64,000 nucleotides of DNA, from positions 124,001 through 188,000 of IMG/VR virus record IMGVR_UViG_3300005056_000001; one strand, 5' to 3'. This document shows, in pieces, positions 11,132 through 61,648 of the stretch (positions within the stretch are counted from its first letter, which is position 1; every line of letters begins with the position of its first letter). The notes under the pieces are model-generated. The model worked only from the letters and a program-made list of their open reading frames with translations. It did no database searches and was not told the DNA's origin. A program made the position numbers and the translations under genes.

Positions 11132-11198
11132 AATATATGGTTTAGTGTATGTACTTTTTTGTACATATATTTACAATAACTTCTATTAAAAAAATATT

Positions 11199-11516
11199 AT
11201 GACACGTGTACAAAGACCCTCAATAAAAAATAAACCAATAAGCGAATCAACAGACTTTCCAAGCTTCTATGGCATTGATGACATGGTTACCTTTATACCC
11301 ATGTTCCGCCATCAAGAAAAATATGGCATTGTTTTAAATTATGGCATTGGTAGAATTGTTGCCGTAAGATTTACCAAGGCAAAAGTATTCTACGATATCA
11401 TAGGCGACTATCATGGAATATTATTCGACAATGTGGACTCCAATAATCTCGAGTACCCTACCGAATATCTGAATATTCCCGACCAACAACCATTTCCCGA
11501 ATGCGAAAGAGTGTAA
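11199..11516 (+). CDS. hypothetical protein
   Basis: GRIVAVRFTKAKVFYD; GTACATA at 11161. Confidence 0.6.
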   Translation: MTRVQRPSIKNKPISESTDFPSFYGIDDMVTFIPMFRHQEKYGIVLNYGIGRIVAVRFTKAKVFYDIIGDYHGILFDNVDSNNLEYPTEYLNIPDQQPFPECERV

Positions 11517-11678
11517 TAATTTTCAAATATTTTCTTGGTACTGTAACGAAAATTGTGTAGTATTGTGTTGTTACTAGCACACAATTTAAATTTGTGGCTA
11601 ATTATTTAGTCAAATAAAGCCCATTTTTGTAACAAATTGTTACTATTTTTGTTACGGACTGAGCCACAAAGTATTACT

Positions 11679-12386
11679 ATGGAAAATAAAGAAAACATAT
11701 TCGCCCTGTTAAGAACTTGTGATGTTGCCAATATTAACCTAGCAATGGTATTGGACAAAGGGAATGGCGGAAATGTCTTTCGATACCTTGAGGATGATTT
11801 TAAGGAAATGTTAGACACAATCAAAAGAGAGAAGTCATTGGATACTGAATCTGTGTGGAGGTTTCTATTTAAATCGGTCGGATTGGTAGAGGATTATGGC
11901 AGTATAACATACATACCAAAAAATATTGGGCTGTTACAGAACCTTGAAATTGTTGCCATTAAACAGTGTAACATCGAAACTATTCCTGAATCGTTTTTTG
12001 AACTCAAAAATCTTACAGAAATAACTATTAGTTATTGCAATCTGAGAAGTATATCTGAAGGGTTTTCGTGCCTCACAAAATTAGATTATCTTAATTTAAG
12101 TGATAACAACATCGAACGCATACATCCGAAATTTAACGGCCTTAAAAAATTGGAATTTCTTAATTTGTCTAACAATAACATTAATCATATTCCTGATTGT
12201 ATCTATGAAATGTCTACGTTATGTACATTATTTTTGGGTAATAATAACATTACGACAATATCTAATAAAATAGAAAATTTGTCTTCGTTAATGTGCATAT
12301 CCTTGAGAGAAAACAACATAACAACACTTCCTACATCAACAAATGCTTTGGATGTGCTTAAACAATTTTTCACCATAACAGACTAA
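11679..12386 (+). CDS. leucine-rich repeat protein
   Basis: ~23-aa LxxLxLxxNxI repeats; N-cap LL....NINLA. Confidence 0.9.
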   Translation: MENKENIFALLRTCDVANINLAMVLDKGNGGNVFRYLEDDFKEMLDTIKREKSLDTESVWRFLFKSVGLVEDYGSITYIPKNIGLLQNLEIVAIKQCNIETIPESFFELKNLTEITISYCNLRSISEGFSCLTKLDYLNLSDNNIERIHPKFNGLKKLEFLNLSNNNINHIPDCIYEMSTLCTLFLGNNNITTISNKIENLSSLMCISLRENNITTLPTSTNALDVLKQFFTITD

Positions 12387-12389
12387 AAC

Positions 12390-12800
12390 ATGAAAAATAG
12401 AAACCAACCAAAAGACTTATACACAACACGAAGAAGGTTTGAAACTATAATGTACGACAAATTTGTCGAGGCCAACATGTATGACGACGACAAGGTAGAA
12501 GCAATCGAAGCCCATGCCATTGCCAAAAAGATTGAAAATGTTTACGAAGACATGGATGCCTATATAGAACAAGAAGATTACGAACTAACATTTTCCGAAG
12601 CAGTAGAAGTGTTATTCGAAAATGGGTGTGTGGTAATAAGAGGCGAAGACTTTAAAGAAGGCGTTTATATTTTCAGCCGTGACAGTGTGTTATACACAAA
12701 AGGTAAGGATTCTGCTCCGATATTGTTTGTGTTGTCTAGAAGAGACTTTGAACAAAAATGGAAATGTCTAAGCACGACCGAGGCATGGAAATTAAAATAG
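12390..12800 (+). CDS. hypothetical protein
   Basis: ORF adjacent to the LRR gene. Confidence 0.6.
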   Translation: MKNRNQPKDLYTTRRRFETIMYDKFVEANMYDDDKVEAIEAHAIAKKIENVYEDMDAYIEQEDYELTFSEAVEVLFENGCVVIRGEDFKEGVYIFSRDSVLYTKGKDSAPILFVLSRRDFEQKWKCLSTTEAWKLK

Positions 12801-12801
12801 T

Positions 12802-13317
12802 CTACAGACCTTCTTTATGTTTTTCCTTGGCCAATTGCTCGACCTCGGAGTCCTCATATCTTTTGTGTGACACAATGGTAATCTGTTCGACATCAAAAAC
12901 GGCATATTCATAGCCGATCTCGGGCTCTTCTTGATTAAGGGCAATAACCGCATCATAGTCACCCTTTCTTGCACGGGCTAGTACTTCCTTTGACATGTCG
13001 TCTGTCGTCCTGATAAACATAGGATTTTCGATGTCTAGGCGGCATGTGATTACACATGGCGTGAATGGTTCATAGTCCGTTGGTAGTCCGTCGGCAACTA
13101 ATTTATACATAAAGGCATTTACCTTGTCTATGAGTCTTGAGTATACCTGTGCGGTGTTTTTTGACGAAGAGAAATGTAGTGCAACCTCATCGGCTTTCTT
13201 GTCTGTTCGTTCTCCCTTAAATTCTGTGGAAAATTGGTCAAACACCTTTGGTGTTCCGTGATATACCTCCACGTTTTTGTACGGGACTTTTGGGATTGTT
13301 TCTACGATTCTTCTCAT
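12802..13317 (-). CDS. ART-PolyVal-like ADP-ribosyltransferase
   Basis: VYHGT...FDQF...HFSS....A..YS; LDIENP; YDAVI...E..YEYAVFD.EQI. Confidence 0.75.
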   Translation of the reverse strand: MRRIVETIPKVPYKNVEVYHGTPKVFDQFSTEFKGERTDKKADEVALHFSSSKNTAQVYSRLIDKVNAFMYKLVADGLPTDYEPFTPCVITCRLDIENPMFIRTTDDMSKEVLARARKGDYDAVIALNQEEPEIGYEYAVFDVEQITIVSHKRYEDSEVEQLAKEKHKEGL

Positions 13318-13318
13318 G

Positions 13319-13627
13319 TTATGCCTGTACTATTCTGATTGAAGAAAAATGTTTTGAGGTTGCCGTAAGCCGAACCAACTTTCTTTGGGTGGCAGTATAC
13401 TCGGCGATCTCAAAATCATAAAACTTTATACTGTCCTCGCCATCTGCAAACAGAATACTGTCCTCGCCAATCGAAATTTTAACATCATACATCTTTATAC
13501 AGGCACAGGCATTTCCTTCGATGGAGGCCTCTATTTTTAGGTTCTTTCCGACCAATTGTTCCATGTCTGCCACGGATTGGAGCGAGTCGTCTGTCAACCC
13601 CTCAACACTTTCGATTATGCGTCTCAT
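13319..13627 (-). CDS. putative internal head protein (MRRIIE N-terminus)
   Basis: start reassigned to 13627; GTACATA upstream. Confidence 0.55.
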   Translation of the reverse strand: MRRIIESVEGLTDDSLQSVADMEQLVGKNLKIEASIEGNACACIKMYDVKISIGEDSILFADGEDSIKFYDFEIAEYTATQRKLVRLTATSKHFSSIRIVQA

Positions 13628-13943
13628 TTTTAATGATTTTATTGTTAATATTGTATGTACCAATGTTCGGGAGGAGGTGTTCTTACTCTACAACCAATCT
13701 TGTATCTGTCGTTTAATGGCAGACAACGCCCAAGCATCACCACTCGAAATTTCAACATGGTGCTGTTTGATGTAGTCTTGAACCATTTTAGAACGCTCTT
13801 TAGTCCCTTTTTTAGACTTAATCACTGTATCGGTTTTTGTATTAACACCCTTCGATTTTTTCATATTTAATTATCTTTAATCTTTGCTAAAAAATGCCAC
13901 GTTTAGCTCCTTGGTACTTATGATTATATACAACATGGTCGTT

Positions 13944-13997
13944 TTTTAGCATACCCAACTATCGGGTTTTGACATTTATAGTTGGGTATGCTAAAAC
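13944..13997. terminator. long inverted repeat / terminator
   Basis: TTTTAGCATACCCAACTAT...ATAGTTGGGTATGCTAAAA. Confidence 0.6.
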
Positions 13998-14010
13998 ATA
14001 ATGTTTGTTA

Positions 14011-14659: not shown

Positions 14660-16669
14660 TTACTTTACTTTTTTTTTACTCTCGGGTTCCTCGTCTGTGT
14701 ATTCGTCCTCTACCTCATTCCAAAAGTCGTCAATCAAGTCCTTGGGAATTTTACCCACCGACCCATACTCTTTGTACTTTGGAGTCTTCAATTTTTTGTC
14801 AAGAAATGCCTGATATTCTTTTTGGGTACCTTCGTTTAATAGATTATTACTGTTAACGTATTTATTAATATCCTTAAGGGTTTCTATATTATTAACCTCA
14901 AAGGCATATCCCTCCCAAGATACCGCCCAAAATTGTTTTGTGTCTTTATCGTAATATAGGTATTTTAACAAGTACGCCTTTGCAATCCAAGGACTCATCT
15001 TGATTTTCTGCATCCCTTTTAAAATACGCTTGGCTTCTTTGTTTGGCGCAGCTTCCTTGACACTCTTCTTATTCATAGACTTCTTGGCAATCGCAATAAT
15101 AGCGGCATCATCAATATCAGGATTATCTTTTTTAATCCCTGCAATCATATCGTCTACTTTTTCTTGTTTGTAATTGTCGCCATGTATTTTTTTGTACATT
15201 TTAGTAATTGCTTGTTTTGCGTCGATGTCTTTGGCTTCGTTTTTACCTTTCTTCTCGGGTTCCTCGTCGGTGTATTCGTCCTCTACCTCATTCCAAAAGT
15301 CGTCAATCAAGTCCTTGGGAATTTTACCCACCGAGCCATACCCTTTGTACTTTGGAGTCTTCAATTTCTTGTCAAGAAATGCCTGATATTCTTTTTTTGT
15401 GCCTTCTGCAAACACCTCGTATCCGTCAATAATATCCAACATACTGTTTAGGTTTTCAATCAGTGCCTTTGGTAAAAGAGCAACCGAATTATACCCCATC
15501 AAACGGGCCTGTCGTTCTGCAATTTCGCCATATTCGGCAATTGCCTCATCAACTGTTTGGTTGGATGTGTTTTTGAGGCGGTTCATAATATTACGAATAT
15601 TCTTGAACGGAAGAGGAATTCGTATCACATCCACCATTTGTTCGGGATCAACAACATTTCCATAAATCCAAGAATGGTGTCCGTCCATTAGGCGGTCTTC
15701 GTGGTCAATAAAATATACACGGTCAAACGGGTCATATGTCTCGTCATGAACCATACCCTTAACCTTTTCAACATTAAATTCTTGTTGTGACGCCTTTAGA
15801 TTCTTGATCTTCATTCGACTTTTCTTGGCATCCCACTTAAACATCATGTGCTTAACCGTGGCAGGAATATCGTTTATCTGTGGAAGATAGTCTCGATTGT
15901 ATCCTAGGTTGTTGTTTTTTGCCTTGGTTACAAAGTTTTCGATTGATGTGGTGTGCATCCCTTTTGTGATGTCCAAAACACTGTCATCAAATACTTCCCA
16001 AATATTTTTCTTATTAGATTTCATTATTGTTGTTCTTTTATTTTCGTTTTTTGGCTTTAATAATCTTGAGAATATACCTAAAACACCGCTAGGTTTAATA
16101 TTTTTGTTGTTATTATACTTTCCTTTCCATAAACCAAGCCCACTGCTTCCATCAAAAACCATTACTGTATCATAGTCGGATCGTGTTACTACTAAATCCC
16201 CCATCTCAAACGAGACATGGGCATACACAATAGGGGCATAGTTATTATCGAAATAACTTTTAATTTCTCTAGCTATACTATCATACTTCTTGGGTAGTAG
16301 AACGCCATCCATTCCGTAATCGCTGTCGCTTAGGTCGATACCATACGATTCGTATATACGCATAACGTGATAATTTGCGGATGGCAGTCCTTTTATATGA
16401 AATATATCCACAATCTCTTGGTCGGTATCAATTATTGCTTTGGTGATACCTTCTGCGTCTTTTCTTACAATAAATCCCCCACCCTCACTAACATACCGCA
16501 GGATGAAGATATTATTAGCCTTTTTGGTAAACATTTCCTTCATAATCTTTCGCCAAACAACCTTTCCGAATTTAGGCAAATATTTATGATTTTTAGGAAA
16601 AATTTTATTGAGCTTTTTTTCAAGGTTAGGGTATCTACTAACACCCATCCTTTCGGTTATGTTTTTCAT
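14660..16669 (-). CDS. modular virion-core-like protein with a ParB/Srx-like domain and a duplicated ~51-aa module
   Basis: LKASQ.E...IDHEDRLMDGHHSW; EGTxKEYQAFLDKKLK...FWNEVEDEY twice. Confidence 0.7.
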   Translation of the reverse strand: MKNITERMGVSRYPNLEKKLNKIFPKNHKYLPKFGKVVWRKIMKEMFTKKANNIFILRYVSEGGGFIVRKDAEGITKAIIDTDQEIVDIFHIKGLPSANYHVMRIYESYGIDLSDSDYGMDGVLLPKKYDSIAREIKSYFDNNYAPIVYAHVSFEMGDLVVTRSDYDTVMVFDGSSGLGLWKGKYNNNKNIKPSGVLGIFSRLLKPKNENKRTTIMKSNKKNIWEVFDDSVLDITKGMHTTSIENFVTKAKNNNLGYNRDYLPQINDIPATVKHMMFKWDAKKSRMKIKNLKASQQEFNVEKVKGMVHDETYDPFDRVYFIDHEDRLMDGHHSWIYGNVVDPEQMVDVIRIPLPFKNIRNIMNRLKNTSNQTVDEAIAEYGEIAERQARLMGYNSVALLPKALIENLNSMLDIIDGYEVFAEGTKKEYQAFLDKKLKTPKYKGYGSVGKIPKDLIDDFWNEVEDEYTDEEPEKKGKNEAKDIDAKQAITKMYKKIHGDNYKQEKVDDMIAGIKKDNPDIDDAAIIAIAKKSMNKKSVKEAAPNKEAKRILKGMQKIKMSPWIAKAYLLKYLYYDKDTKQFWAVSWEGYAFEVNNIETLKDINKYVNSNNLLNEGTQKEYQAFLDKKLKTPKYKEYGSVGKIPKDLIDDFWNEVEDEYTDEEPESKKKVK
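14680..14833. repeat. ~154-bp direct repeat, copy 1
   Basis: near-identical to 15253-15406. Confidence 0.9.
15253..15406. repeat. ~154-bp direct repeat, copy 2
   Basis: near-identical to 14680-14833. Confidence 0.9.
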
Positions 16670-16791
16670 TATTGTTGTTTTAAGTATATTTTAATCTGAC
16701 TTGTAGTATGTACAAACCACAAGACCACGAACAACAAACGGTTTTTTGCGTTTATTAGATTAATACATCACCATTATTATATATAGAACAA

Positions 16792-17951: not shown

Positions 17952-18061
17952 AAATACCACAAAAAAATACTGCCCCAAATCAGGGCGGTATTTTTTTGTT
18001 GGTATTAAGTCCATTATTGTCCTTTGTACATAGACTATTAACCAACAAAACACAAAAAACA

Positions 18062-18448
18062 ACGAGACGTGTTCAGAGAATAAATGAAGAAGCCTATGAG
18101 GTGGACAACAAATATAAATTACACACATCACTACAGGAGTTTATGGACGAGTGGTCTATAGATTATACATGGAAAGGTGCCCTTGAAATGATGCTTGGGA
18201 ATGGTCTTAGCCTGATTGAGATTAATGGCTATGGATTCGACCAAAAATTAATTGCTGACTATGAGGTTATGTATGTTAGACAGCGTTTTGATTTTCATAA
18301 AAGCAATGAACGGGGCGGGTCTGTATTCCAAACCTACAACAAGGAAGCCATTACAAGTGTCGCTTTTGACCACAAAGGCAGAGACCTTGTTTTCGTTATT
18401 GAGCTTAAAAATAAACTCACGATTACGGCATATGTAAACAAAGACTAG
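18062..18448 (+). CDS. putative internal head protein with an ACG start, (M)RRVQRINEE
   Basis: GTACATA at 18026, A-rich leader, ACG where related N-termini have ATG. Confidence 0.5.
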   Translation, partial: TRRVQRINEEAYEVDNKYKLHTSLQEFMDEWSIDYTWKGALEMMLGNGLSLIEINGYGFDQKLIADYEVMYVRQRFDFHKSNERGGSVFQTYNKEAITSVAFDHKGRDLVFVIELKNKLTITAYVNKD

Positions 18449-19194
18449 TCTAAACTAGTCTTTGTACTTTTTGTTTGTGGAATGTCGGACTTTATTTGGG
18501 TATAGGCTGCCGTGAATGCGGCAGTTAGACTTGGTATAAATGCCAATATTGTTGGTGCCAATGCTGCCGTGTACGGGCTAGGGCTTGCACTTGCTGCCAA
18601 CTTTGTTGCAAAACTAGTCAATTCGTTAACCACGGTTTGTATCAGATCAGCAATTGCATCATGCACATCGGCATTTTTTGTTCCTAGTGTTGCGGGTTCG
18701 GCAGACTTGTTTTCGGTTCCCAAGGAAACCATGTCCTTTAGGATGTGGACAACACGACCATCGGCTTCTAGTCGTATCGTGTTGTCCACTCCAATCATAA
18801 ATTTTGCCGTCTTAGAGCCTTTCTCTAGCTCAACCACAAATCCGTCAGACTCAAGATAGCGAACCGTAATAAAGCCGTCAGAACCGAAATCCTCTAGGTT
18901 TTTATACAAAAGAACTGCGGCAGATTCGTAATCTCCGTCAGGAATGGCGGCCTCGTTTATGTAGTGCCCCCCTGCATACCACACAGGATGATAAATACTG
19001 TTCTTGATAAACGTGCACACAACCTCGGAACCCACAGAAGGCAGGTCATGACGGTTGCGTGTCACATAACTAGGCAATGCCCAAGGGATTAAATCCTCGT
19101 CCAATTCATCATACCATCCACGAACCCGAACCTTTATGCGTCCAATCTTTTTTGGGTCTGTGATATCAATAACCTCGCCTAGAAACTCTTCCAT
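18445..19194 (-). CDS. gp5-like baseplate hub/spike protein (N-terminal OB fold)
   Basis: GEVIDITDPKKIGRIKVRV..LIPWA..LPSVGSEV..F. Confidence 0.85.
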   Translation of the reverse strand: MEEFLGEVIDITDPKKIGRIKVRVRGWYDELDEDLIPWALPSYVTRNRHDLPSVGSEVVCTFIKNSIYHPVWYAGGHYINEAAIPDGDYESAAVLLYKNLEDFGSDGFITVRYLESDGFVVELEKGSKTAKFMIGVDNTIRLEADGRVVHILKDMVSLGTENKSAEPATLGTKNADVHDAIADLIQTVVNELTSFATKLAASASPSPYTAALAPTILAFIPSLTAAFTAAYTQIKSDIPQTKSTKTSLD

Positions 19195-19217
19195 GAAATT
19201 TTACGATATGTACAAGA

Positions 19218-19916
19218 TTAAAAATCCTTTATTCGCTTTATGTATTTGTCACACACCGAGGTTTTTGATAAAGACTCCATAATGTCTTTGGTATTCTTGA
19301 ATGTATTTCCGTGTATTACTATAGTCCTTAGTCCCGAAACACGACCAATTGATTTCGGTAAAACATACAGTTCATTGTTTTGGAGCAAAAGTTCCTTTAG
19401 ATTGGTCAGGTTCCCGACCTCCTTTGGAAGTTCCCTGATACGGTTGTTGTCAACAAACAGATCCTCCAAGTTTTTAAGGTTGCAGATCTCGTTTGGTATT
19501 TCCTTCAGTAGGTTGTTTGAAAGAACCAATCTTTCTAGCGACTTTAAATTACCAATTTCCTTGGGCAGACTAGTGAGTCCGTTGTTTGCCAAATTAAGCC
19601 ATGTTAGATTGGGTAATCCACATAGATCAATTGGTATCTGTCCAAGGTGGTTTATTCTCAAATTAACATGCCTTAAATTTTTCAAATAACCTAGGCCACC
19701 CTTCAGGGTATCCAAAGAACAGCAAGACAAGTCCAAAACCGTTTCTTGTATCAACAGCTCAAAATCAATATTTATTAAGTTCATGAGCCATTCCAACTCA
19801 CCTCTGAGTGTATCAATAACCTTGGTACCCTTTGATTTGTCCAACTCTTCTGCCGACACAAAATCTCCAAGCAACAACATGTCGTATACTATTTTTTGGT
19901 CTTCTGTGAAATTCAT
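19218..19916 (-). CDS. leucine-rich repeat protein
   Basis: LPKEIGNLKSLERLVLSNNLL-type repeats. Confidence 0.92.
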   Translation of the reverse strand: MNFTEDQKIVYDMLLLGDFVSAEELDKSKGTKVIDTLRGELEWLMNLINIDFELLIQETVLDLSCCSLDTLKGGLGYLKNLRHVNLRINHLGQIPIDLCGLPNLTWLNLANNGLTSLPKEIGNLKSLERLVLSNNLLKEIPNEICNLKNLEDLFVDNNRIRELPKEVGNLTNLKELLLQNNELYVLPKSIGRVSGLRTIVIHGNTFKNTKDIMESLSKTSVCDKYIKRIKDF

Positions 19917-20405: not shown

Positions 20406-21686
20406 TTAGTCTCCCATTAAAAAATCAATTGCATCATTATCGTCGTCTATGATCTCATACACACCATCCTCGGTTTTGACCTCTTCTATCTCCTTGACAT
20501 GTACAAGATATTTTCTGTAATACTCAATCTTGTCTGAATACTTAAAGTCGGTCTGTGGGTCGTTAAACTTCAGATCCGAAAGCATGCTCAACAGACTGCT
20601 CGGGAGCTCTTGTTTGTTTATGAGCACCATTCTTCGGTTGCTATAAAATCCTTTTCGGATATCGGCCCTGAATTTTTTTGTGTCGAAACCTTTGTTCTCC
20701 ATACGTTTTGACTTGTCTGATTCGACAACAAATTCTACAACCCTGTCAATAAACTTTTCGTCATACAAAAGTTTCATTGATGGTCGAAGCTTTTTACCCT
20801 CTGTATCGACCTTCCCCTCGTGCTCCTCATTGATTGTTGCCACAAACTTTTTAATCTGTGTAGGAGTCGTTTTGCGCCTCATTACCTTGTTGGTCTTGGT
20901 TGTGGTTCGCCAAAGGTTTATTGCATGTATATTGTCGCCATCATCCCCACGAATGATTTTTTCGAGCATATATGCAAAGGGGCAGATATAAACGATGTTT
21001 AATATACTTTTGTATATCCCGTATATTTTTGTTTCGGGATGAATAAACTTGGAAGATTTAGACAGGACGTATCTAAGGTTATGATAGTGCTGTCCCATAA
21101 ATTTTGGGTTCTTGGATTTTGAGGTGTCACGCTCCAAGTCCTCCACGAATTCTCTCATGGATTCCGAAAGAAACAAGGTGTGTGTCTGTGGATTAAGTCT
21201 GTAACAGATATCATTAAGACTTTGATTTGCGTCGCCATCTGCCGAGAATATAAAACAGTCGTATCCCATGCCGTTGATGACACTGCCCACATAGGCCATA
21301 ATATCATCTGCCTCGGCCTTGTGTACACCAAGGACATAGACCCCGAACTGTTCCTGAATGATGTTTAGGAATTTGTTGTAGGCCAAATCAATTGTGTCCC
21401 AATCCATATCATCGTCCTTCTTTTTGCGGGTGCCCTTGTAGCCCTTGTCGTTGGTGCTTTCAAGAACCATTTGTGGGAACTCTTCATAGTAGTCGCAGGT
21501 ATGTCTCCATGACGGCTTAGAATCCTTGGTAAACAGAATACCCCATGGACGGTAATCCACAATGGCATTCTTGAGCGAGCCAAGAAATTTATTCACAAGC
21601 ATATTACATTGGTCGGGACTTGTTATTTTGGTACCACTATGCAATGCCCTGTGCATGAAGTAGGTACCATCCATTATCATTAACAT
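20406..21686 (-). CDS. rnh: T4-like RNase H / 5'-3' flap exonuclease
   Basis: IMDGTY, DSKPSWR, YKGTR, EADD, SADGD, GDDGDNI; start reassigned to 21686. Confidence 0.85.
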   Translation of the reverse strand: MLMIMDGTYFMHRALHSGTKITSPDQCNMLVNKFLGSLKNAIVDYRPWGILFTKDSKPSWRHTCDYYEEFPQMVLESTNDKGYKGTRKKKDDDMDWDTIDLAYNKFLNIIQEQFGVYVLGVHKAEADDIMAYVGSVINGMGYDCFIFSADGDANQSLNDICYRLNPQTHTLFLSESMREFVEDLERDTSKSKNPKFMGQHYHNLRYVLSKSSKFIHPETKIYGIYKSILNIVYICPFAYMLEKIIRGDDGDNIHAINLWRTTTKTNKVMRRKTTPTQIKKFVATINEEHEGKVDTEGKKLRPSMKLLYDEKFIDRVVEFVVESDKSKRMENKGFDTKKFRADIRKGFYSNRRMVLINKQELPSSLLSMLSDLKFNDPQTDFKYSDKIEYYRKYLVHVKEIEEVKTEDGVYEIIDDDNDAIDFLMGD

Positions 21687-21687
21687 A

Positions 21688-22689
21688 TTATTTGGTTTTA
21701 GGGGTTTTAATAATGGTAGAAAACAGGCGTTCAACCTTTTTTTGTAAGTCATCCACACAGTCGTTGACCCAAAAAATAATATCACACTCCTTGAAAATGT
21801 CAATGGTAAAGGAGGTTTCTGATTCTAAGGGTTTGTTTGGGTCAAAAATTCCAATCACCAAATCAAACATTCCTTTTTGGTTACAAGACCGTAATTCTTC
21901 AATAGAACGCATTCCTGCATACATATCATTATTCAACAGAATATACTCGGCAAGTCTAGATTTATTGGGTGTGTTGTATTCGCATATCATGTCAAACCAC
22001 TCGTCTCTCTTACTCCTTCTGTCAAGAAAACATTCCTCTAGTGTTTTGTATCCATACTTGTCCTTGAGTGCCTTAAAAATAAACAATTCATTGGCTGCTG
22101 TTGACGAGTCGCAATGGGTAAGGCCCACAACCTTGTTTATGATTTCTGCCAAGGTGCTTTTCCCGTGCTCTTTGTGTCCTAGTATAAGAAATTTAGTTTT
22201 TGTTTTTGCCCCAAATTCCTCGATTGTATCAACTCTTAGATGCGTCTTATAGTCTTGATTGTGTGATGCAGAATATAGGTAGGTTAATATACCCGCCTCA
22301 TTTAGCTCTTTGACGTGGTGAGCCCCATCGTCCAAGAAAATGTCAACATTGTGCTTCTTTAATGTTTCGACCTTGTTCGCCACCGTATAAACAGGGGCAT
22401 CAGGGAACCCATTTCGTGAAAGCCATAACTCACTTATACGGGAAGGAATCTTACGTGCCGTACAATACCCATCCACCTTAAAATTAATTTTATCGGGCGA
22501 GTTCAGAACAGGCATTAGTAGCCAAAAATCTTTGTCGTTTTCTACCTTATGTAGATTGTCCACAAATCTTTTGTCGTTATATTCGGAAGGTCTTGATTTG
22601 TCTTCGAAATCGAACCAATTATTAAAATGTGTGACAAAATCTGCCAATACACCATCAATGTCCAAGAATACTTTTTTGGTTTGTATCAT
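21688..22689 (-). CDS. HAD 5'(3')-nucleotidase fused to a P-loop dNMP-kinase-like domain
   Basis: DIDGVLADF...FLDD; then GHKEHGKST...GMRS..E. Confidence 0.78.
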   Translation of the reverse strand: MIQTKKVFLDIDGVLADFVTHFNNWFDFEDKSRPSEYNDKRFVDNLHKVENDKDFWLLMPVLNSPDKINFKVDGYCTARKIPSRISELWLSRNGFPDAPVYTVANKVETLKKHNVDIFLDDGAHHVKELNEAGILTYLYSASHNQDYKTHLRVDTIEEFGAKTKTKFLILGHKEHGKSTLAEIINKVVGLTHCDSSTAANELFIFKALKDKYGYKTLEECFLDRRSKRDEWFDMICEYNTPNKSRLAEYILLNNDMYAGMRSIEELRSCNQKGMFDLVIGIFDPNKPLESETSFTIDIFKECDIIFWVNDCVDDLQKKVERLFSTIIKTPKTK

Positions 22690-22738: not shown

Positions 22739-22993
22739 CTATTGTTTATATTTATCGTTTAAATAATTTTTAAACATACGTTTATTTATCCATGAAGCCA
22801 TCTTGTACGTGATAAATAAAAATAGCACATGTAATACAGGAGCAAGGAAACTCACACATCCAAACAAAAATAATAGAAGTGTAAATAAAAAACTACCTTC
22901 TACTATCAGTTCGATGTTTATGAGAGTCAAAAAAACGTTTGGGTAACGTTTCTGTCTCCATATTTTATACTCTCTGAGTTGTTGTTTAGTCAT
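22739..22993 (-). CDS. small membrane protein
   Basis: two hydrophobic segments. Confidence 0.55.
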   Translation of the reverse strand: MTKQQLREYKIWRQKRYPNVFLTLINIELIVEGSFLFTLLLFLFGCVSFLAPVLHVLFLFITYKMASWINKRMFKNYLNDKYKQ

Positions 22994-24017
22994 AATACGT
23001 CCTGTCTTTTTCGGCCATTGATGCAATCACCTTTGTCCTGAAAACATTGCGTTGTGGGTATGCCTTCAATATTTTGTTCATCTCAAACAGGATTCCCATG
23101 ATAACAACCTTTCTTGAGGCTGTCTCATAGATGTGCGAAAGTGATCCGATCGCATCCATTGTGTCCATGCACATAATGCGGGCACCCTCGACCATACCAA
23201 GCTTTCTTGCACCCGTAATAAATTCGTCGAAACATCGAGAGGCACGCTCTACGCCATATTCCTCCAACTCCTCGAATATGGCCTTGCCGCTCTTGGAGCA
23301 AAACACGGCACGCAGCAGTGGCGACATATTGTCCCCGAACTTCACGTCAGACATTGTGATGCGTGCCTCTTTTGTGTCATTGAGTGTTTGTAGGTGTTGA
23401 ATACCGTTCCGTAAACATTCCTTGTATGTTTTAAACAGGTATTCAACAACACCGTCCTCGACAGGCTTGACCGAAATGTTTTTATAGTAGGCACAAATAG
23501 CAGACTTCATTTCGTGTAGCTCCTTTTTGGTGAGGTCAAAGGTCACGACATTTGCCATAACCCGATTGAATAATGCACCCTCAAGAGAAAGTGTGTTCGA
23601 GGTCAATATAAAGTTGGTATTCACACTTTTCTCCATTGAACTTGCCAATTGTTCCTGTCCGTTTTTGTGTAAACGGTTTATCTCATCAATAAAGATAATA
23701 CTCTTACCGATACGGGCACGTCCTAGAAATTCGTCTACAACTTTGCGGATGTGTTCGGGTTTTGTTTTTGAGGCATCCAAGTACAGTTTCGACCCCTTGT
23801 GGTGGTAATATAACGAGAATATTGATTTACCCTTTGTGGTTTTACCGTTTCCGAACGAACCAAAAAATAAATAGTTTCGGTCTATTCCGTTTTCGGTTTC
23901 ATGGATCTGTCCAAGTATTCTTGGATGTAGGATGATTTCATTCTTCTTGACGGGACGTTTGTCTATTTCCCATGATCCTGTGTTTTTCATATTAATGTTT
24001 TCGTTTATGAATACCAC
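22986..24017 (-). CDS. clamp-loader AAA+ subunit (gp44/RFC-like)
   Basis: W..KRP, GSFGNGKTT, FIDEINRL, FILTSN. Confidence 0.8.
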   Translation of the reverse strand: MVFINENINMKNTGSWEIDKRPVKKNEIILHPRILGQIHETENGIDRNYLFFGSFGNGKTTKGKSIFSLYYHHKGSKLYLDASKTKPEHIRKVVDEFLGRARIGKSIIFIDEINRLHKNGQEQLASSMEKSVNTNFILTSNTLSLEGALFNRVMANVVTFDLTKKELHEMKSAICAYYKNISVKPVEDGVVEYLFKTYKECLRNGIQHLQTLNDTKEARITMSDVKFGDNMSPLLRAVFCSKSGKAIFEELEEYGVERASRCFDEFITGARKLGMVEGARIMCMDTMDAIGSLSHIYETASRKVVIMGILFEMNKILKAYPQRNVFRTKVIASMAEKDRTYYD

Positions 24018-25026: not shown

Positions 25027-25728
25027 TTAACCCCGTCCTGTTATATTTGACGGGAGGTGGTTCCATGACACGTCCATTAACTTGGTTTGTACCAAGGTAA
25101 TAATTTCCATATAAAGATTGAGTCCGTTGTCGAAGGTGAAAATATTCTCCGAATCATCGGATCCAATATCTTCCCACCAAAGCGTTACTTTCTTGGATGT
25201 TATTTTAAGCTTCCCTACGATATTGGCAAGATCCCAATACTTGTCGTAATTGTCGTCGCCTGCACCCTTTGGTTTTGGTTTAAAAACACGATTTTGGGCC
25301 ACAAAAATATCGGATTCGATTGCCACCGTTTGCTGTTCCATGTTATATAGTGCCACCTTGGCCAATATTTTATTGGCAAGATTCCTTAGACGGGCATACT
25401 TTAGGGTATCAAAAACCATTTGTGAGTAATTGATATTGTTGTGATATAGTGGTCTTCTGATCTTCCATTGTATGATGTAAAACTTTCGGAATGTTGCAAG
25501 ATTGTAATGCGACACATCTATCAAGTCACAGACTTCCTTGTTGAATGTAAAAAGTTTTAACATACCGTCGTCAATATGAAATTGTCCGTATTCTTTGTTG
25601 TACACAGAAACGCTTTCGCTGAGTGGTTTATAATTATTGACAGCCTCCGTCAATAAATCCTCGTTTACACGTATTGCCTCCACCAACTCTTTTGATGGCA
25701 GTTGTTCGTTTTTGATATATTTGCCCAT
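25027..25728 (-). CDS. hypothetical, possibly late/head protein
   Basis: GTACATA upstream (25759-25765); LVE/VNE/LTE/LSE motifs near the N-terminus. Confidence 0.6.
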   Translation of the reverse strand: MGKYIKNEQLPSKELVEAIRVNEDLLTEAVNNYKPLSESVSVYNKEYGQFHIDDGMLKLFTFNKEVCDLIDVSHYNLATFRKFYIIQWKIRRPLYHNNINYSQMVFDTLKYARLRNLANKILAKVALYNMEQQTVAIESDIFVAQNRVFKPKPKGAGDDNYDKYWDLANIVGKLKITSKKVTLWWEDIGSDDSENIFTFDNGLNLYMEIITLVQTKLMDVSWNHLPSNITGRG

Positions 25729-26285
25729 TGTGATATTTATAATAATGAATACTTTGTGTATGTACCTTTGAAAAAAATCAATGTGTAGATAGCCGTTTTT
25801 TAGGGTTTTTTAGGCTTTACATATTATAAAAAATTATATCCTTACTGTTACTAGGGGTTTTGTGCAAAAAGCCTAGTAACAGCTATGCCACTCTAGCCCT
25901 GTATATGTCGTGGTTACAGCCCTGCTTTTTTTGTGGTTTTTTGTCAGCTATTCAATGTAAGAAGTGACAAAAACGCACAATACTTGCCGAAAATCAAGAA
26001 AATAAATGCTTTTTGGTCAAAACACCCTCGCTTTTTTTCGATTTGCTTTTTGGTTAAACTTTTTGGTTGACCGCAAACCCTTTACCTGTCGAGTGTTTAG
26101 ACTGACCAATCGGTCATTCAAAAAGTGCGTACCTATTATAACAAAAAACTATTATAGACGTCCAATTTTCCGTTTTTTGTGATAGTTCACGGTTTTTTTG
26201 GAAGAAAAGGTAATTATACGAATCAGTGTCAACAAATCGCTTTTGATTGCGTTAATGTTGTATTGATAACTTATTAAAATACAAT

Positions 26286-49975: not shown

Positions 49976-50329
49976 CTACCTACGTTTAATATAATAATAT
50001 TTTATATCAACCAAGGAACTAACCGACAAAAACCTAGGAGTAAGAACAATAACATTTTCACTAGTCCCCATCCTTTTGTAATTCGGATTAAAATCGTCAT
50101 ACATATTCAATGTATAGGTCAGTGTGTCTACAAACTTATCCGAGACAATAACAAGTGTTAATAATGAGTCATTGACGCATATTGTGCCTGACTCATTGAT
50201 GTATTCACCTAAAACAACTTCATTGCTTAAAGAAACCTTTGTGACAGTTTTTACTTGGCTGTAACATAATGTCTGTCCGTAACAGTATGACGTAAGCAAT
50301 AACAATAAAGGAAATAATAATTTTTTCAT
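49976..50329 (-). CDS. putative secreted protein
   Basis: signal peptide MKKLLFPLLLLLTSYCYG-Q (Bacteroidota-style Gln at +1). Confidence 0.6.
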   Translation of the reverse strand: MKKLLFPLLLLLTSYCYGQTLCYSQVKTVTKVSLSNEVVLGEYINESGTICVNDSLLTLVIVSDKFVDTLTYTLNMYDDFNPNYKRMGTSENVIVLTPRFLSVSSLVDIKYYYIKRR

Positions 50330-50481
50330 TTTGTGTGATTTTGTGATTCTGTTGTGTATTAAAATATTTTTGTTAAAGGCATATATGTACCTAACTTTGT
50401 AGGTACTTTCTAAGGTAGCGTTTTAGGCCCTTTTCTCCTTCTGTAAGGCTTTCTTGGTCATATTAAAAGGTGTATGCTTCT

Positions 50482-53529: not shown

Positions 53530-54735
53530 TTGAAGAAAAACAAGACATATAAATACAGGTTATCCCCTAATGTTACACAAAGCATTATGCTGAATAAAAC
53601 ATTCGGTTGTGTGCGTGCATATTGGAATAATCTTGTTGCGACATTTAATTCGTATGATAAAGTAACTAATCCCAAGCCTTTATTTAATACAGGAAAGGAG
53701 TTTAGTGACGTTTTTGTTTACGCAAAGGAAGTATCTGCTGCATCACTACAGCAAAAGTTTCGTGATTTTTCTCAATTCAAAAATCAGTTCTTCAATAAAA
53801 AAAGGAAAAAGAAAATAGGAAGGCCAAGCTTTAAGAAAAAAGGTTTTGGAGATTCCTTTAGATTGCCCAACCAAAAAATCCGTATCAAGGATAACAAAAT
53901 TAGACTTGAAAAGATTGGTTGGGTTAAATTTGACAACCACAGACAATTGCCTGTGGATTCACGTGTCCTGTCAATAACAGTAAAGAAAGACAGTGTAGGA
54001 GATTATTTTGCTTCTGTCTGTTTTGAGTATGTATGGAAGCCCAAGATAAATAGAATGAACATTATAGAGTCAAAAAAGGAAGTATCTACTATAAAACCAA
54101 ATGTGGGCATCGACCTAGGACTTACCTATTTAGCCATCCTTTCGGATGGTACAGTATTCTTGAATCCTAAATATCTTAGAGAAAGCCAATCTAAGCTTAA
54201 AAAGTCACAAAGAATCCTTTCCCGAAAAATAAAAGGTAGTGTACGATGGAACAGGCAACGGATAAAGGTTGCCAAATTACACCGTAAGATTGTTCGTCAA
54301 CGTGATTGGTCACATCATAACATAACCACGTGGATAGCCGACAATTACAACAACGTAGGGATTGAAACGTTAAGTATACAAAACATGATGAAGAACAGGA
54401 AACTTTCTAAATCTTTTGCTGATACCTCACTAAGTAAATTTGTCAATATGCTTATTTATAAGGTAGATGATAGAGGCAACGAGGTAGTCAGACTAGGAAC
54501 GTTTGTTCCTTCGACAAAAGAATGTTCTTCCTGTTCACACCAACAGACCGTTGCGCTATCTGAAAGAACCTTTAAATGCGAATGCTGTGGATTTGCCATG
54601 GATAGGGACTTGAATGCAGCAATAAATATTAAGAAAAAGACCGTAGGAGTTAATGCGGTCATCGCCAATGGCGACAAACGAACACTGAGCAACAAGAAGT
54701 CTCTACACCCGAATGTGGGTGTAAAGCAGTTGTGA
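53530..54735 (+). CDS. tnpB: TnpB RNA-guided endonuclease (IS200/IS605, IS1341-type, no tnpA)
   Basis: YKYRLSPN..FGCVR..WN; GIDLG; IETL; CSSC/CECC; DRDLNAAINI. Confidence 0.95.
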   Translation: MKKNKTYKYRLSPNVTQSIMLNKTFGCVRAYWNNLVATFNSYDKVTNPKPLFNTGKEFSDVFVYAKEVSAASLQQKFRDFSQFKNQFFNKKRKKKIGRPSFKKKGFGDSFRLPNQKIRIKDNKIRLEKIGWVKFDNHRQLPVDSRVLSITVKKDSVGDYFASVCFEYVWKPKINRMNIIESKKEVSTIKPNVGIDLGLTYLAILSDGTVFLNPKYLRESQSKLKKSQRILSRKIKGSVRWNRQRIKVAKLHRKIVRQRDWSHHNITTWIADNYNNVGIETLSIQNMMKNRKLSKSFADTSLSKFVNMLIYKVDDRGNEVVRLGTFVPSTKECSSCSHQQTVALSERTFKCECCGFAMDRDLNAAINIKKKTVGVNAVIANGDKRTLSNKKSLHPNVGVKQL

Positions 54736-58997: not shown

Positions 58998-59005
58998 CTA
59001 CGAGC

Positions 59006-59380: not shown

Positions 59381-59390
59381 ACAATAAATA

Positions 59391-59786: not shown

Positions 59787-59917
59787 TTAGCGATCTGCTT
59801 GTTTCATGAAATATGTGTATACACTTATTTTGTTACACAAGCATTCAACGTTTTTGAGTGTGTAAAGTTCCTGATTTTGCCAATGTTTTATATATGTGTC
59901 TTTATATAGACCAACAA

Positions 59918-59952
59918 AAATGCCCAATAATTATAATAATTATTGGGCATTT
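59918..59952. terminator. hairpin between convergent genes
   Basis: AAATGCCCAATAATTAT..ATAATTATTGGGCATTT. Confidence 0.7.
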
Positions 59953-59954
59953 GC

Positions 59955-60944
59955 TTATACATCCTTTAGTTGCTCCTTAATACTATCGGCCAGAAATTTG
60001 GCTAAATTGACAGGAACAGCATTCCCAATCATTTTATATCCTGTGGCAACTTTTTTGTAATGAAAAATAAAATCATCAGGAAATGTTTGTATCCGTGCAC
60101 ATTCTCTTACGCTTAGGCGTCTGTATAAATGTTCTTGTGTGGGTTCGAATATGCGCTTGTCACGCTCAATAGATACCATTTTTGGAGCCTGTGGATGTAT
60201 GGGGGCATGTCTTCCTCCTGCCTGAATAGTAAAGGACTGTTCGTTCCAACTTCTGACCCTGTTTCTTGACATATACATTGACGAAAAACCTCCGATCATA
60301 TATTCATGGTTGGGTACTTTGCACTGTCCGTTGCTATAATTCTTTTCTAGCGCAGCAAGGCTATTGTGTTGTAAGTCCGATATTGTCTCCTGTAGTGTTA
60401 TTTTCGGGAATGTAATGTCAGGAAATTTGAAATCGAAACCCAAATCTTTTCGGATGCCAATAAATATCACACGTTTTCTGTCTTGGGGAACATTGTAGTC
60501 GGATGCATTAAGGAGTTTGAATGATAGGTTATAACCAACACCCGCATTTTTTAACATTTCCTTTATGTTATCCAAGGCAGATTCGTGTTTTTTGAGCAAC
60601 ATACCACTCACATTTTCTGCCAAGAAGAATTTGGGTTGTTTGTCATTAAGGATTCTAATAAAGTCAAAGAACAACTGTCCTCTTTTGTCGTCCATACCCT
60701 TAAGACTACCTGCTTCGCTCCAACTTTGGCAGGGCGGGCCACCGATGATACCATCACAATCAGGAACCGCATCCGAGGTTATTTTTGTGATACTTCGTTT
60801 GTCCAATATGGTTTCGGGATGATTCTTTTCATAGGTTTCCCAAATATCCTTGTCATATTCGTTGGCCCAAATAACATCAAAGCCTGCCTTTTGGAATCCT
60901 AAATCCAATCCGCCTGCACCCGCAAAAAAAGAAACTACTTTCAT
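59955..60944 (-). CDS. C5 cytosine DNA methyltransferase, M.HaeIII-like (probable GGCC specificity)
   Basis: FAGAGG, GGPPCQSWSEAG, ENV, QDRKR, TRD MSRNRVR.W.E..FTIQA.GR...HPQAP. Confidence 0.93.
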   Translation of the reverse strand: MKVVSFFAGAGGLDLGFQKAGFDVIWANEYDKDIWETYEKNHPETILDKRSITKITSDAVPDCDGIIGGPPCQSWSEAGSLKGMDDKRGQLFFDFIRILNDKQPKFFLAENVSGMLLKKHESALDNIKEMLKNAGVGYNLSFKLLNASDYNVPQDRKRVIFIGIRKDLGFDFKFPDITFPKITLQETISDLQHNSLAALEKNYSNGQCKVPNHEYMIGGFSSMYMSRNRVRSWNEQSFTIQAGGRHAPIHPQAPKMVSIERDKRIFEPTQEHLYRRLSVRECARIQTFPDDFIFHYKKVATGYKMIGNAVPVNLAKFLADSIKEQLKDV

Positions 60945-61037
60945 TTGTATATATTTCGTTTTGTAATAAACATTGTTAAATTACAAAAATAAACAATTTT
61001 GTTTATATAATGAAATTATTGTGTGTATTTTTTAGTC

Positions 61038-61532
61038 CTAATCAATACCCTTAAACGGCTTGAAGTGTTCTGTTATAATAAGAAACTTTGACCTGCTGTT
61101 GTTTGCATAGCTTATCATGGCCGTCCATTTCATTTTGTTTGTCTCAAAGTCACGGCTTCCTTTTATTGTCTGTGACAGTGGCTTTACCTCAACAAGCCAT
61201 CTTTCGTCGTTATCTGTGTTGACCACAAAATCAATATAATAATTTCCTTGTTTGTAGCCCTTTATTTCATTGCCTCTTTTATATCCAACCGCAAATGGTT
61301 CCGAATCCCACGACACGACCTTGGCACACCTTTCGCACCATATCATAAATTTACGCTCAAGGGATGATCTGTATATCGGGCGATATTGACCAATGTATTT
61401 GTTCTTCAGGGGGAGTTGAAAGTATCCATTGTCGTACACAAGTTTTTTGTTTGGCTTGTTATTCCTCATACGGGCACCACTTTCTTGGGTGATTTCCCCG
61501 ATTATTATTTTTTGGGCGTTCTTGTTTTTCAT
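61038..61532 (-). CDS. T4 gp4-like head completion nuclease (TnsA-like PD-(D/E)XK)
   Basis: KYIG....IYRSSLERKFM.WC...W.SE...YYIDF...LVEVKP. Confidence 0.85.
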   Translation of the reverse strand: MKNKNAQKIIIGEITQESGARMRNNKPNKKLVYDNGYFQLPLKNKYIGQYRPIYRSSLERKFMIWCERCAKVVSWDSEPFAVGYKRGNEIKGYKQGNYYIDFVVNTDNDERWLVEVKPLSQTIKGSRDFETNKMKWTAMISYANNSRSKFLIITEHFKPFKGID

Positions 61533-61648
61533 GTGTTATATATTTAATTATGTACATAACCCTAAACAAAGTTTGGATATAATAAATATTGTCCTATCTT
61601 TGCAATTGAACACAAGGCCTTTATGGCTATTTTTTCACAAAATTTAGT

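What the first reader, a model, noticed from the sequence alone, without database searches (positions are those of the whole stretch)
11148..61558. Candidate late promoter GTACATA
Seen: GTACATA on the coding strand lies 12-54 nt upstream of the gp5-like gene (19207), gp4-like gene (61549), 520-aa structural gene (11148), and the starts at 11199 (11161), 13627 (13654), 16669 (16707), 18062 (18026), 25728 (25759) and 50329 (50384). A variant, GTGCATA, precedes 14364. Established: T4-like phages use a single -10-type late box (TATAAATA) read by gp55. Inference: this is a different late-sigma specificity. Roughly a dozen chance hits are expected in the window, so the positional enrichment is the evidence.
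Basis: partly seen in the sequence, partly recalled or inferred. Interest (0 to 1): 0.6.

Follow-up and report, generated by a model that had tools for sequence, protein, structure and literature searches.

The report
Variant T4-type late promoter GTACATA
GTACATA is very probably the late-gene promoter of this 368-kb jumbo phage: a re-specified version of the phage T4 late box, read by the host RNA polymerase carrying a tiny phage-encoded gp55-like sigma factor.

Summary
By count alone the window is not enriched (14 hits, 9.4 expected). However, 8 of the 14 lie in the 3.7% of oriented positions that are intergenic and upstream of a start (p=8e-9). Across the 368-kb genome GTACATA is the top upstream-enriched 7-mer (49 of 93 sites, 14.8-fold, p=2e-45). 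It is strongly directional, has no -35 partner, and heads long genes. Every functionally labelled one is a virion or packaging gene. A 66%-identical relative keeps the motif upstream of orthologous genes.

The genome shows no phage RNA polymerase. It has one sigma-like gene, outside the window: a 117-aa truncated homolog of T4 gp55 (HHalign 96.6%, E=7e-10) ending in SLDAIY, which resembles T4's clamp-binding SLDFLY.

Aligned to the T4 late box, GTACATA differs from ATAAATA at -12 and -9. These are two of the three bases that gp55 flips into protein pockets. Tenacibaculum phage PTm1 uses ATACATA instead, and full-length gp55 relatives use ATAAATA.

No transcript data were available, and no gp33 or sliding clamp was identified. 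Verdict: a new variant of a known kind.

The parts
11148..11154 (-). GTACATA box, 16 nt upstream of the 520-aa gene 9569-11131(-). It forms a back-to-back divergent pair with the box at 11161.
   Evidence: The gene's only relatives are hypothetical proteins of Tenacibaculum jumbo phages. Its PTm1 ortholog carries ATACATA upstream.
11161..11167 (+). GTACATA box, 31 nt upstream of gene 11199-11516(+), 105 aa.
13654..13660 (-). GTACATA box, 26 nt upstream of gene 13319-13627(-), 102 aa.
16707..16713 (-). GTACATA box, 37 nt upstream of the 669-aa gene 14660-16669(-).
19207..19213 (-). GTACATA box, 12 nt upstream of the gp5-like baseplate hub gene 18445-19194(-).
   Evidence: The gene matches phrog_37871, baseplate protein, at E=1e-55.
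25759..25765 (-). GTACATA box, 30 nt upstream of the 233-aa gene 25027-25728(-). This gene heads a same-strand string that includes a gp44-like clamp loader (22986-24017) and a 5'-3' exonuclease (20406-21752).
   Evidence: The 233-aa protein itself could not be assigned a function.
50384..50390 (-). GTACATA box, 54 nt upstream of gene 49976-50329(-), 117 aa.
61549..61555 (-). GTACATA box, 16 nt upstream of the head-closure (T4 gp4-like) gene 61038-61532(-).
   Evidence: The gene matches phrog_218, head closure, at E=3e-24. Its PTm1 and G001 orthologs carry ATACATA upstream.
61552..61558 (+). Overlapping opposite-strand GTACATA within the palindrome TATGTACATA. It is a possible divergent promoter for ORF 61649-62521(+), 90 nt away. 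Its use is uncertain.
18026..18032 (+). GTACATA copy of uncertain status. It lies inside ORF 17996-18448(+) if that gene starts at TTG 18017. Otherwise it is 68 nt upstream of GTG 18101 or 110 nt upstream of ATG 18143.

Best explanation
GTACATA is the core of this phage's late promoter class, with extended consensus W-T-D-GTACATA-N4-AAA. It is a single -10-like box with no -35 element. It corresponds to positions -12 to -6 of the T4 late box TATAAATA, with G in place of A at -12 and C in place of A at -9.

The likely mechanism is as follows. The host's core RNA polymerase carries a phage-encoded 117-aa sigma, a truncated homolog of T4 gp55. This sigma keeps the sigma-region-2-like domain, stops soon after helix H4, and ends in a clamp-binding-like tail (SLDAIY). 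It melts the box, reads non-template bases in pockets, and starts transcription about 5-7 nt downstream at an A-rich patch. About 50 such sites drive the virion and packaging genes on both strands.

Shown by analysis here: the motif's specificity, position, direction and conservation; the structural and packaging nature of the labelled downstream genes; the gp55 homology; and the switch of the box between related phages.

Inferred: that the element is a promoter; that it acts late; that this sigma reads it; the pocket-based explanation of the two base changes; and any coupling to a sliding clamp.
For: (1) Specificity. GTACATA is the top upstream-enriched 7-mer of the genome (56 of 93 within 100 nt upstream, p=2.6e-41; 49 of 93 in intergenic-upstream space, 14.8-fold). 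Most of the 21 single-base variants sit near background.

(2) Direction. In spacers between same-strand genes it points with the genes 31 times and against them 4 times. It occurs 24 times in divergent spacers and never in convergent ones.

(3) Architecture. Nothing is conserved upstream beyond three bases, and A is favoured at +5 to +7 after the box (42, 35 and 36 of 52 sites). This matches the T4 late promoter as described in PMC2988020.

(4) Downstream genes. The functionally labelled ones are tail sheath, large terminase, prohead protease, gp6-like wedge, gp5-like hub, adaptor, head closure, gp2-like DNA end protector and a tail protein. Motif-headed genes have a median length of 276 aa against 145 aa for the rest (p=1e-8). 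Motif-free blocks hold a helicase, methyltransferases and a transposase.

(5) Conservation. In relative G001 (sheath 66% identical) GTACATA is again the top 7-mer (29 of 46, p=4e-30). It precedes 19 of 25 orthologs of the motif-headed genes (18 as GTACATA, 1 as ATACATA). It is a conserved island in aligned spacers whose flanks and terminator hairpins differ.

(6) Sigma. The genome has one sigma-like gene, with weak hits to Pfam Sigma70_r2 and phrog_234, the T4 gp55 family. The family profile matches the gp55 family at HHalign 96.6%, E=6.9e-10, over 112 columns. The Foldseek top hits are nearly all sigma region 2 domains. The best query TM-score, 0.62, is to chain F of the gp55-dependent RNAP open complex 7D7C.

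(7) No other polymerase. There is no match to T7-like RNAP or to Rpb2_6 / Rpb1_2. This agrees with PMC7824862, which says group-2 jumbo phages lack an RNAP and encode minimal sigmas.

(8) Box switching. PTm1 (sigma 32% identical) uses ATACATA (44 of 108, p=1.6e-38) with GTACATA at background. G000 shows the reverse. Loci encoding full-length gp55 relatives use ATAAATA.

(9) Structure. gp55 inserts A-12, A-9 and A-8 into pockets (PMC7892883). The box changes at -12 and -9 and keeps A at -8. T99, the -8 pocket residue, is invariant. N13, a -9 pocket residue, is K or S in all three phages with C at -9 (G000, G001, PTm1), and also K in pT24, whose box is unresolved.
Against: There is no transcript or 5'-end evidence, because no RNA run was listed. 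'Late' rests only on gene function.

One motif-headed string contains replication-type genes, a clamp loader and an exonuclease.

No gp33 (phrog_254) and no gp45-type clamp (phrog_223) were found, so clamp coupling is unsupported beyond the sigma's tail.

The sigma lacks helix H5 of the HLH motif. Truncating that motif impairs open-complex formation and gp55-dependent transcription in T4 (PMC7892883).

The individual family hits for the sigma are below curated cut-offs, and its model is only moderate (pLDDT 65).

About 28 coding-region copies exist, so the 7-mer alone cannot be sufficient.

The pocket-residue correlation rests on few, phylogenetically related sequences.
Confidence: 0.8

Rival explanations
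1. GTACATA is the binding site of a phage-encoded transcription factor (an activator or repressor) next to promoters read by some other sigma. It would then not be the -10-like element itself.
For: GTAC is palindromic, and two pairs overlap as TATGTACATA or lie back to back. Tandem copies exist at genome 49104/49125/49147 and 222408/222419, as is common for operators. No transcription start data are available.
Against: The motif is strongly directional (31:4). Only 1 of 52 upstream sites has the TAT flank that a palindrome would need. No second conserved promoter element accompanies it. It aligns base for base with the T4-type box used by relatives of the same sigma family. Some boxes lie only 10-16 nt from the ATG, leaving no room for a separate downstream promoter.
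Confidence: 0.07
2. The box is a promoter, but it is read by a host alternative sigma factor or by an undetected, highly diverged phage RNA polymerase rather than by the gp55-like protein.
For: The link between sigma and box is correlative only. Diverged phage RNAPs such as the phiKZ type can escape Pfam models. The sigma here lacks part of the HLH motif that T4 gp55 needs (PMC7892883).
Against: The box changes between phages (GTACATA, ATACATA, ATAAATA) in step with divergence of the phage sigma, including between two phage types of Tenacibaculum-like hosts. No RNAP domain was found. PMC7824862 reports that this phage group has no RNAP.
Confidence: 0.07
3. The motif acts at the RNA level, as a processing site or a 5'-UTR element of late mRNAs, not as a DNA promoter.
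For: It is oriented with the downstream gene and lies in the would-be leader. PMC2988020 itself warns that some mapped T4 5' ends may come from processing.
Against: It also heads first genes in divergent spacers (24 copies), where an upstream transcript is least expected. Its distance to the ATG varies from 10 to 95 nt. It often directly follows a terminator-like hairpin and T-run. Its homology to the T4-type box and the presence of a gp55 homolog also argue against this reading.
Confidence: 0.04
4. The pattern is a chance or compositional artefact of AT-rich intergenic DNA.
For: The raw count in the window is not significantly above expectation.
Against: It is the top 7-mer at p=1e-41 to 1e-45. 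One-base neighbours of similar composition sit at background. The result is replicated in an independent relative.
Confidence: 0.01

Closest known systems
Bacteriophage T4 late promoters (TATAAATA at -13 to -6) read by gp55, with gp33 and the gp45 sliding clamp
   Same: Both are a single 7-8 bp -10-like box with no -35 element and an A/T-rich start region. Both have about 50 sites per genome, on both strands, upstream of virion genes (PMC2988020). Five of the eight box positions are identical (T-11, A-10, A-8, T-7, A-6). The phage encodes a gp55 homolog with a hydrophobic-acidic C-terminal tail, SLDAIY against T4's SLDFLY. A gp44-like clamp loader is present.
   Different: The box has G at -12 and C at -9, where T4 gp55 reads flipped adenines (PMC7892883). 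The sigma is 117 aa rather than 185 aa and lacks helix H5 and the long linker. No gp33 or gp45 homolog was detected. The host is probably a Flavobacteriia bacterium rather than an enterobacterium, which I infer from the relatives.
Known natural variants of the T4-type late box: Aeromonas phage Aeh1, with (a/g)C at -13/-12, and T4-like phages KVP40, 44RR and S-PM2 with a highly similar consensus
   Same: These are precedents that the 5' end of the box, at -13/-12, can vary between gp55-encoding phages (PMC2988020).
   Different: The variants I found described keep the run of A at -10 to -8. A C at -9, as in ATACATA and GTACATA, did not appear in the literature I could search.
Tenacibaculum phage PTm1 (Shirahamavirus), with ATACATA sites found here
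   Same: It has the same short gp55-like sigma family (32% identity). The box has the same geometry and direction (40:4). The same kinds of genes lie downstream: sheath, protease, the 635-aa probable capsid gene, head closure and others.
   Different: The first base is A rather than G, and each phage ignores the other's box.
Bacteroidota housekeeping sigma-A promoters (TTG at -33, TAnnTTTG at -7)
   Same: These use the same host polymerase core. Such boxes occur elsewhere in these phage genomes. They are strongly enriched in pT24 and PTm1, and they form part of a separate cassette in G000.
   Different: GTACATA has neither the TTTG end nor a -33 partner.

Membership tests
T4-type gp55-dependent late promoter | A single -10-like box with no conserved -35 element | tested here: met
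   A logo of 52 upstream sites shows information only from three bases before the core to +7 after it.
T4-type gp55-dependent late promoter | Box sequence TATAAATA (or NATAAATA) | tested here: not met
   The core is GTACATA. Five of eight positions match, with G at -12 and C at -9. ATAAATA-type boxes are not the enriched class in this genome. It is therefore a variant, not the canonical box.
T4-type gp55-dependent late promoter | The phage encodes a gp55-family sigma | tested here: met
   The 117-aa ORF at genome 260799-261152(-) matches the T4 gp55 family at HHalign 96.6%, E=6.9e-10. It also hits phrog_234 at E=0.004 and Sigma70_r2 at 19.3 bits. The Foldseek top hits are sigma region 2 domains, including chain F of the gp55-dependent open complex 7D7C.
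T4-type gp55-dependent late promoter | Located upstream of late (virion and packaging) genes, on either strand | tested here: met
   All nine functionally labelled downstream genes are virion or packaging genes. Sites occur on both strands. The timing itself was not measured.
T4-type gp55-dependent late promoter | Transcription starts about 6 nt downstream of the box, late in infection | not testable with these tools
   No RNA run was listed for this genome. The only indirect hint is an A-rich patch at +5 to +7.
T4-type gp55-dependent late promoter | Co-activator gp33 | tested here: inconclusive
   phrog_254 gave no match at E<=1. A scan for other proteins with the sigma-like C-terminal tail found none that were convincing. 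gp33 is small and fast-evolving. PMC7824862 reports gp33 orthologs in this phage group.
T4-type gp55-dependent late promoter | Sliding clamp (gp45) as activator, bound through a C-terminal motif on the sigma | tested here: inconclusive
   The tail SLDAIY-acidic resembles T4's SLDFLY-acidic, and a clamp loader is present. However, phrog_223 gave no match, and the 233-aa candidate could not be modelled (pLDDT 49).
Bacteroidota sigma-A promoter | TAnnTTTG at -7 with TTG at -33 | tested here: not met
   The core lacks TTTG and has no upstream partner. TAnnTTTG is a separate, weaker signal in this genome.
Promoter of a phage-encoded RNA polymerase (T7-like or phiKZ-like) | The phage encodes its own RNA polymerase | tested here: not met
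   There are no matches to PF00940, PF00562 or PF00623. The PF00940 search rang in no control genome, so it carries less weight.

The most novel reading that the evidence does not exclude
A 117-aa 'minimal gp55', consisting of a sigma region-2 domain plus a clamp-binding-like tail and lacking H5 of the HLH motif, suffices as a late sigma. Its flipped-base pockets would have been naturally re-specified in steps, ATAAATA to ATACATA to GTACATA, changing the bases read at -9 and then at -12. This would yield mutually exclusive sigma/promoter pairs in related Flavobacteriia jumbo phages. It would be the first natural series showing how a single-domain sigma changes the identity of its flipped -10 bases.
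Probability: 0.45. Interest if true: 0.7.

Novelty: new variant of a known kind. Interest (0 to 1): 0.6.

Why it matters
T4 late transcription is the textbook example of a one-domain sigma reading a single box, but I found few natural specificity variants described. This case offers three related phage lineages whose boxes differ at two of the three bases that gp55 is known to flip into pockets. Each phage ignores the other's box. That makes the question of how a sigma region-2 domain chooses its flipped bases directly testable, by sigma swaps and pocket mutations. The result also gives a practical annotation rule for late genes in a poorly annotated group of marine jumbo phages. If the pairs prove orthogonal, they could be compact sigma/promoter parts for Bacteroidota.

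Tried and rejected
- **RNA evidence:** The look-up of sequencing runs listed no RNA run.
- **gp33:** phrog_254 gave no match.
- **gp45 clamp:** phrog_223 gave no match, and local phmmer with T4 gp45 found nothing credible.
- **The 233-aa motif-headed protein (window 25027-25728) as the clamp:** no verdict. Pfam gave only a sub-threshold Nudix_N hit, the atlas was uninformative, the AF2 model had pLDDT 49, and Foldseek TM-scores were at most 0.2.
- **Genes next to the clamp loader in PTm1 and pT24:** they have no detectable G000 homologs.
- **Scan for other proteins ending in the sigma-like tail:** only the sigma itself matched.
- **Second sigma candidate (Sigma70_r4_2 hit):** it is a LAGLIDADG homing endonuclease.
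- **GTGCATA as a variant box:** rejected (2 of 44).
- **GTACATT (11 of 74):** it may belong to TAnnTTTG-type boxes (TACATTTG) rather than being a weak late box. This is unresolved.
- **pT24 late box:** ATAAATA is the best 7-mer upstream of late orthologs, but only weakly (7 of 22 against 28 of 266, p=0.009). I treat it as tentative.
- **Tool and script errors:** one search had a masking bug, and its classification was replaced. Searches were input errors.
- **Large representative-protein search:** not run, because the profile-profile comparison settled the sigma's family.


Full report
**Context.** The window is bases 124001-188000 of a single 368,109-bp viral contig with direct terminal repeats. 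It is therefore a complete or near-complete jumbo phage genome from a metagenome. Its structural proteins find only Tenacibaculum (Flavobacteriia) jumbo phages pT24, PTm1 and PTm5, at 23-30% identity. I made my own gene calls with a dicodon model blind to the motif: 529 genes, 88.8% coding.

**Observation.** Shuffles give 9.4, so the count alone is unremarkable. Position is what matters. Eight hits lie in intergenic DNA 12-54 nt upstream of a same-strand start codon. Only 3.7% of oriented positions qualify as such, giving p=8e-9.

Genome-wide, GTACATA is the most upstream-enriched 7-mer tested: 56 of 93 copies lie within 100 nt upstream of a start (p=2.6e-41). When restricted to intergenic DNA, 49 of 93 copies fall in 3.56% of positions (14.8-fold, p=1.6e-45). 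A third-order Markov model expects 51 copies in the genome against 93 observed. The excess roughly equals the number of upstream sites.

Most of the 21 single-base variants sit near the intergenic background. The exceptions are modest signals for GTACATT, GTACCTA, GTACAAA and TTACATA.

**Anatomy.** A logo of the 52 upstream sites gives W-T-D-GTACATA-N4-AAA. C is never seen just before the core. A is favoured at +5, +6 and +7 after it (42, 35 and 36 of 52). There is no information further upstream, so there is no -35 element. Distances from the box to the ATG run from 10 to 95 nt, mostly 10-55 nt.

The element is directional. In spacers between same-strand genes it points with the genes 31 times and against them 4 times. 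It occurs 24 times in divergent spacers and never in convergent ones. Several sites directly follow a terminator-like hairpin and T-run. Tandem sites exist at genome 49104/49125/49147, 222408/222419 and 261385/261418. Divergent pairs exist at window 11148/11161 and 61549/61552.

**Downstream genes.** Forty-eight genes are headed by the box. Their median length is 276 aa, against 145 aa for the other genes (p=1e-8). Every one that received a functional PHROG label is a virion or packaging gene:
- tail sheath
- large terminase
- prohead protease
- gp6-like baseplate wedge
- gp5-like hub
- head-tail adaptor
- head closure
- gp2-like DNA end protector
- a tail protein

Long blocks of small genes have no box, for example 100-120 kb with 33 genes. 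The box-free + strand blocks of the window hold a DNA helicase, a DNA methyltransferase and a transposase. There is one caveat. The box at window 25759 heads a string that also contains a gp44-like clamp loader and a 5'-3' exonuclease.

**Conservation.** A 137-kb contig, G001, has a sheath 66% identical to this phage's. In it GTACATA is again the top 7-mer (29 of 46, p=4e-30). The box precedes 19 of 25 orthologs of the box-headed genes, 18 as GTACATA and 1 as ATACATA. With a 60-nt window it is present upstream of 16 of 25 orthologs against 10 of 149 other genes (p=4e-10). In aligned orthologous spacers the box is a conserved island. Its flanks carry indels, and the upstream terminator hairpin has a different sequence.

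**The reading machinery.** No T7-like RNA polymerase and no multisubunit polymerase domains were found. Iyer et al. (PMC7824862) state that group-2 jumbo phages, where they place PTm1, lack an RNA polymerase and encode minimal sigma factors and gp33.

The genome has one sigma-like gene, outside the window at 260799-261152(-), encoding 117 aa. Its individual family hits are weak: Sigma70_r2 at 19.3 bits, against 13.1 bits for T4 gp55 itself, and phrog_234, the T4 gp55 family, at E=0.004. Homologs exist in G001 (66% identity), PTm1 (32%) and pT24 (30%).

A profile of this family matches a profile of T4 gp55 homologs at HHalign probability 96.6%, E=6.9e-10. The match covers 112 columns, aligned to gp55 residues 1-125. 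The AlphaFold model is only moderate (pLDDT 65), and no Foldseek hit is significant. Even so, the top hits are nearly all sigma region 2 domains. The best query TM-score, 0.62, is to chain F of 7D7C, the gp55-dependent RNAP open complex, which I take to be gp55. A second candidate, a Sigma70_r4_2 hit, proved to be a LAGLIDADG endonuclease.

The protein ends in VSLDAIY plus acidic residues. T4 gp55 ends in SLDFLY plus acidic residues, and that hydrophobic-acidic C-terminal segment is its sliding-clamp-binding epitope (PMC2988020). The short sigma stops soon after helix H4. It therefore lacks H5 of the helix-loop-helix motif and the long linker.

**Relation to the T4 box.** The T4 late box spans -13 to -6, lacks a -35 element, and is followed by an A/T-rich region (PMC2988020). 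Aligned at its 3' end, GTACATA occupies -12 to -6. It differs from ATAAATA only at -12 (A to G) and -9 (A to C).

Shi et al. (PMC7892883) show that gp55 unstacks and inserts three non-template bases into pockets:
- A-12 stacks on Y97.
- A-9 contacts N13 and H95.
- A-8 hydrogen-bonds to T99.

So the two changed bases are two of the three pocket bases, and the third, A-8, is kept. In alignment A6, T99 is invariant and Y97 stays aromatic. H95 is F in every non-T4 member, so it is not diagnostic. N13 is N in all full-length relatives with ATAAATA boxes. It is K in G000, G001 and pT24, and S in PTm1. This fits a remodelled -9 pocket. It remains a correlation among few related sequences, and the alignment of the N-terminal region is less certain.

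**A series of box specificities.** The same unbiased k-mer test gives ATACATA as the top 7-mer in PTm1 (44 of 108, p=1.6e-38), oriented 40:4, with GTACATA at background (3 of 63). In G000, ATACATA is at background (4 of 114). ATACATA precedes 9 of 20 PTm1 orthologs of the box-headed genes, including the sheath, the protease and the 635-aa probable capsid gene.

Loci from IMG/VR that encode more distant, full-length (156-190 aa) members of the sigma family show ATAAATA as their top upstream 7-mer. L095 and L096 score 5 of 6 (p=2e-8), and L090 scores 4 of 7. For pT24 the late box is unresolved. ATAAATA is the best candidate but only weakly. Its dominant signal is the Bacteroidota sigma-A type, TTG-N19-TAnnTTTG (16 of 32).

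I found no paper describing GTACATA or ATACATA as a phage promoter. The original PTm1 paper is not in the searchable library.

**What could not be shown.**
- No RNA run was listed, so transcription starts and timing are inferred.
- gp33 and a gp45-type clamp were not found.
- The 233-aa protein at the head of the clamp-loader string could not be modelled.
- No other protein carries the sigma-like tail.
- Clamp coupling is therefore only a hypothesis, based on the tail and the clamp loader.

**Verdict.** GTACATA is very probably the late promoter box of this phage, a re-specified T4-type box read through a truncated gp55-like sigma. I rate it a new variant of a known kind. Confidence is 0.8 for the promoter-plus-sigma reading and about 0.45 for the pocket re-specification story.

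Noticed in passing
window 7351-7376 (+), with 27 more copies genome-wide, e.g. genome 2708, 31265, 58752, 100206, 247249 and 309767: A second oriented intergenic cassette of about 90 nt. It consists of a direct repeat GTTAA-N6-(T/A)GTTAA(AAT), a conserved terminator-like hairpin, and a TAnnTTTG-like box. Of 28 copies, 25 are intergenic. About 23 lie 69-133 nt upstream of a same-strand start, in blocks of small genes that lack GTACATA, and none of those copies heads a GTACATA-headed gene. It is a candidate early or middle promoter, or a regulator-binding site.
   Followed up: partly
window 53530-54735 (+): A transposase gene inside the phage genome (phrog_506, E=9e-98). My gene call gives it a TTG start.
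   Followed up: no
window 40744-41979 (+) and 59955-60944 (-): Two paralogous DNA methyltransferases (phrog_116, E=9e-67 and 5e-89). They sit in non-late and late-adjacent contexts respectively.
   Followed up: no
window 11679-12386 (+), 19218-19916 (-) and 62903-63847 (+): Three paralogs of one family of unknown function (phrog_6688 / phrog_21719) are scattered among late genes.
   Followed up: no
genome 223622-224425 (+), outside the window: A LAGLIDADG homing endonuclease with an N-terminal sigma-region-4-like helix-turn-helix. It lies about 1.2 kb downstream of, and on the same strand as, a tandem GTACATA pair.
   Followed up: yes
genome 301536-302404, outside the window, compared with L046 7915-8095: The divergent spacer between the terminase gene and the 1070-aa gene is about 870 nt here but about 150 nt in relative G001. 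This points to an insertion between the two late promoters.
   Followed up: no
genome 49104, 49125 and 49147 (-), outside the window: Three GTACATA boxes lie in tandem with a 21-22 nt period inside a repeated unit (CCAATGGTACATACC-like), upstream of a 324-aa gene.
   Followed up: no
L045 (IMGVR_UViG_3300029927_000101, 8.7 kb): On this contig from a different sample, the sheath gene encodes a protein 100% identical to this phage's. The phage, or a near-identical one, therefore recurs in another sample.
   Followed up: no
window 25027-25728 (-): The 233-aa protein heading the clamp-loader gene string has almost no detectable relatives. Only one 59%-identical protein turned up among 5.8 billion. 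Its predicted secondary structure is a twofold helix-plus-sheet pattern. I considered it as a sliding-clamp candidate but could not test that.
   Followed up: partly
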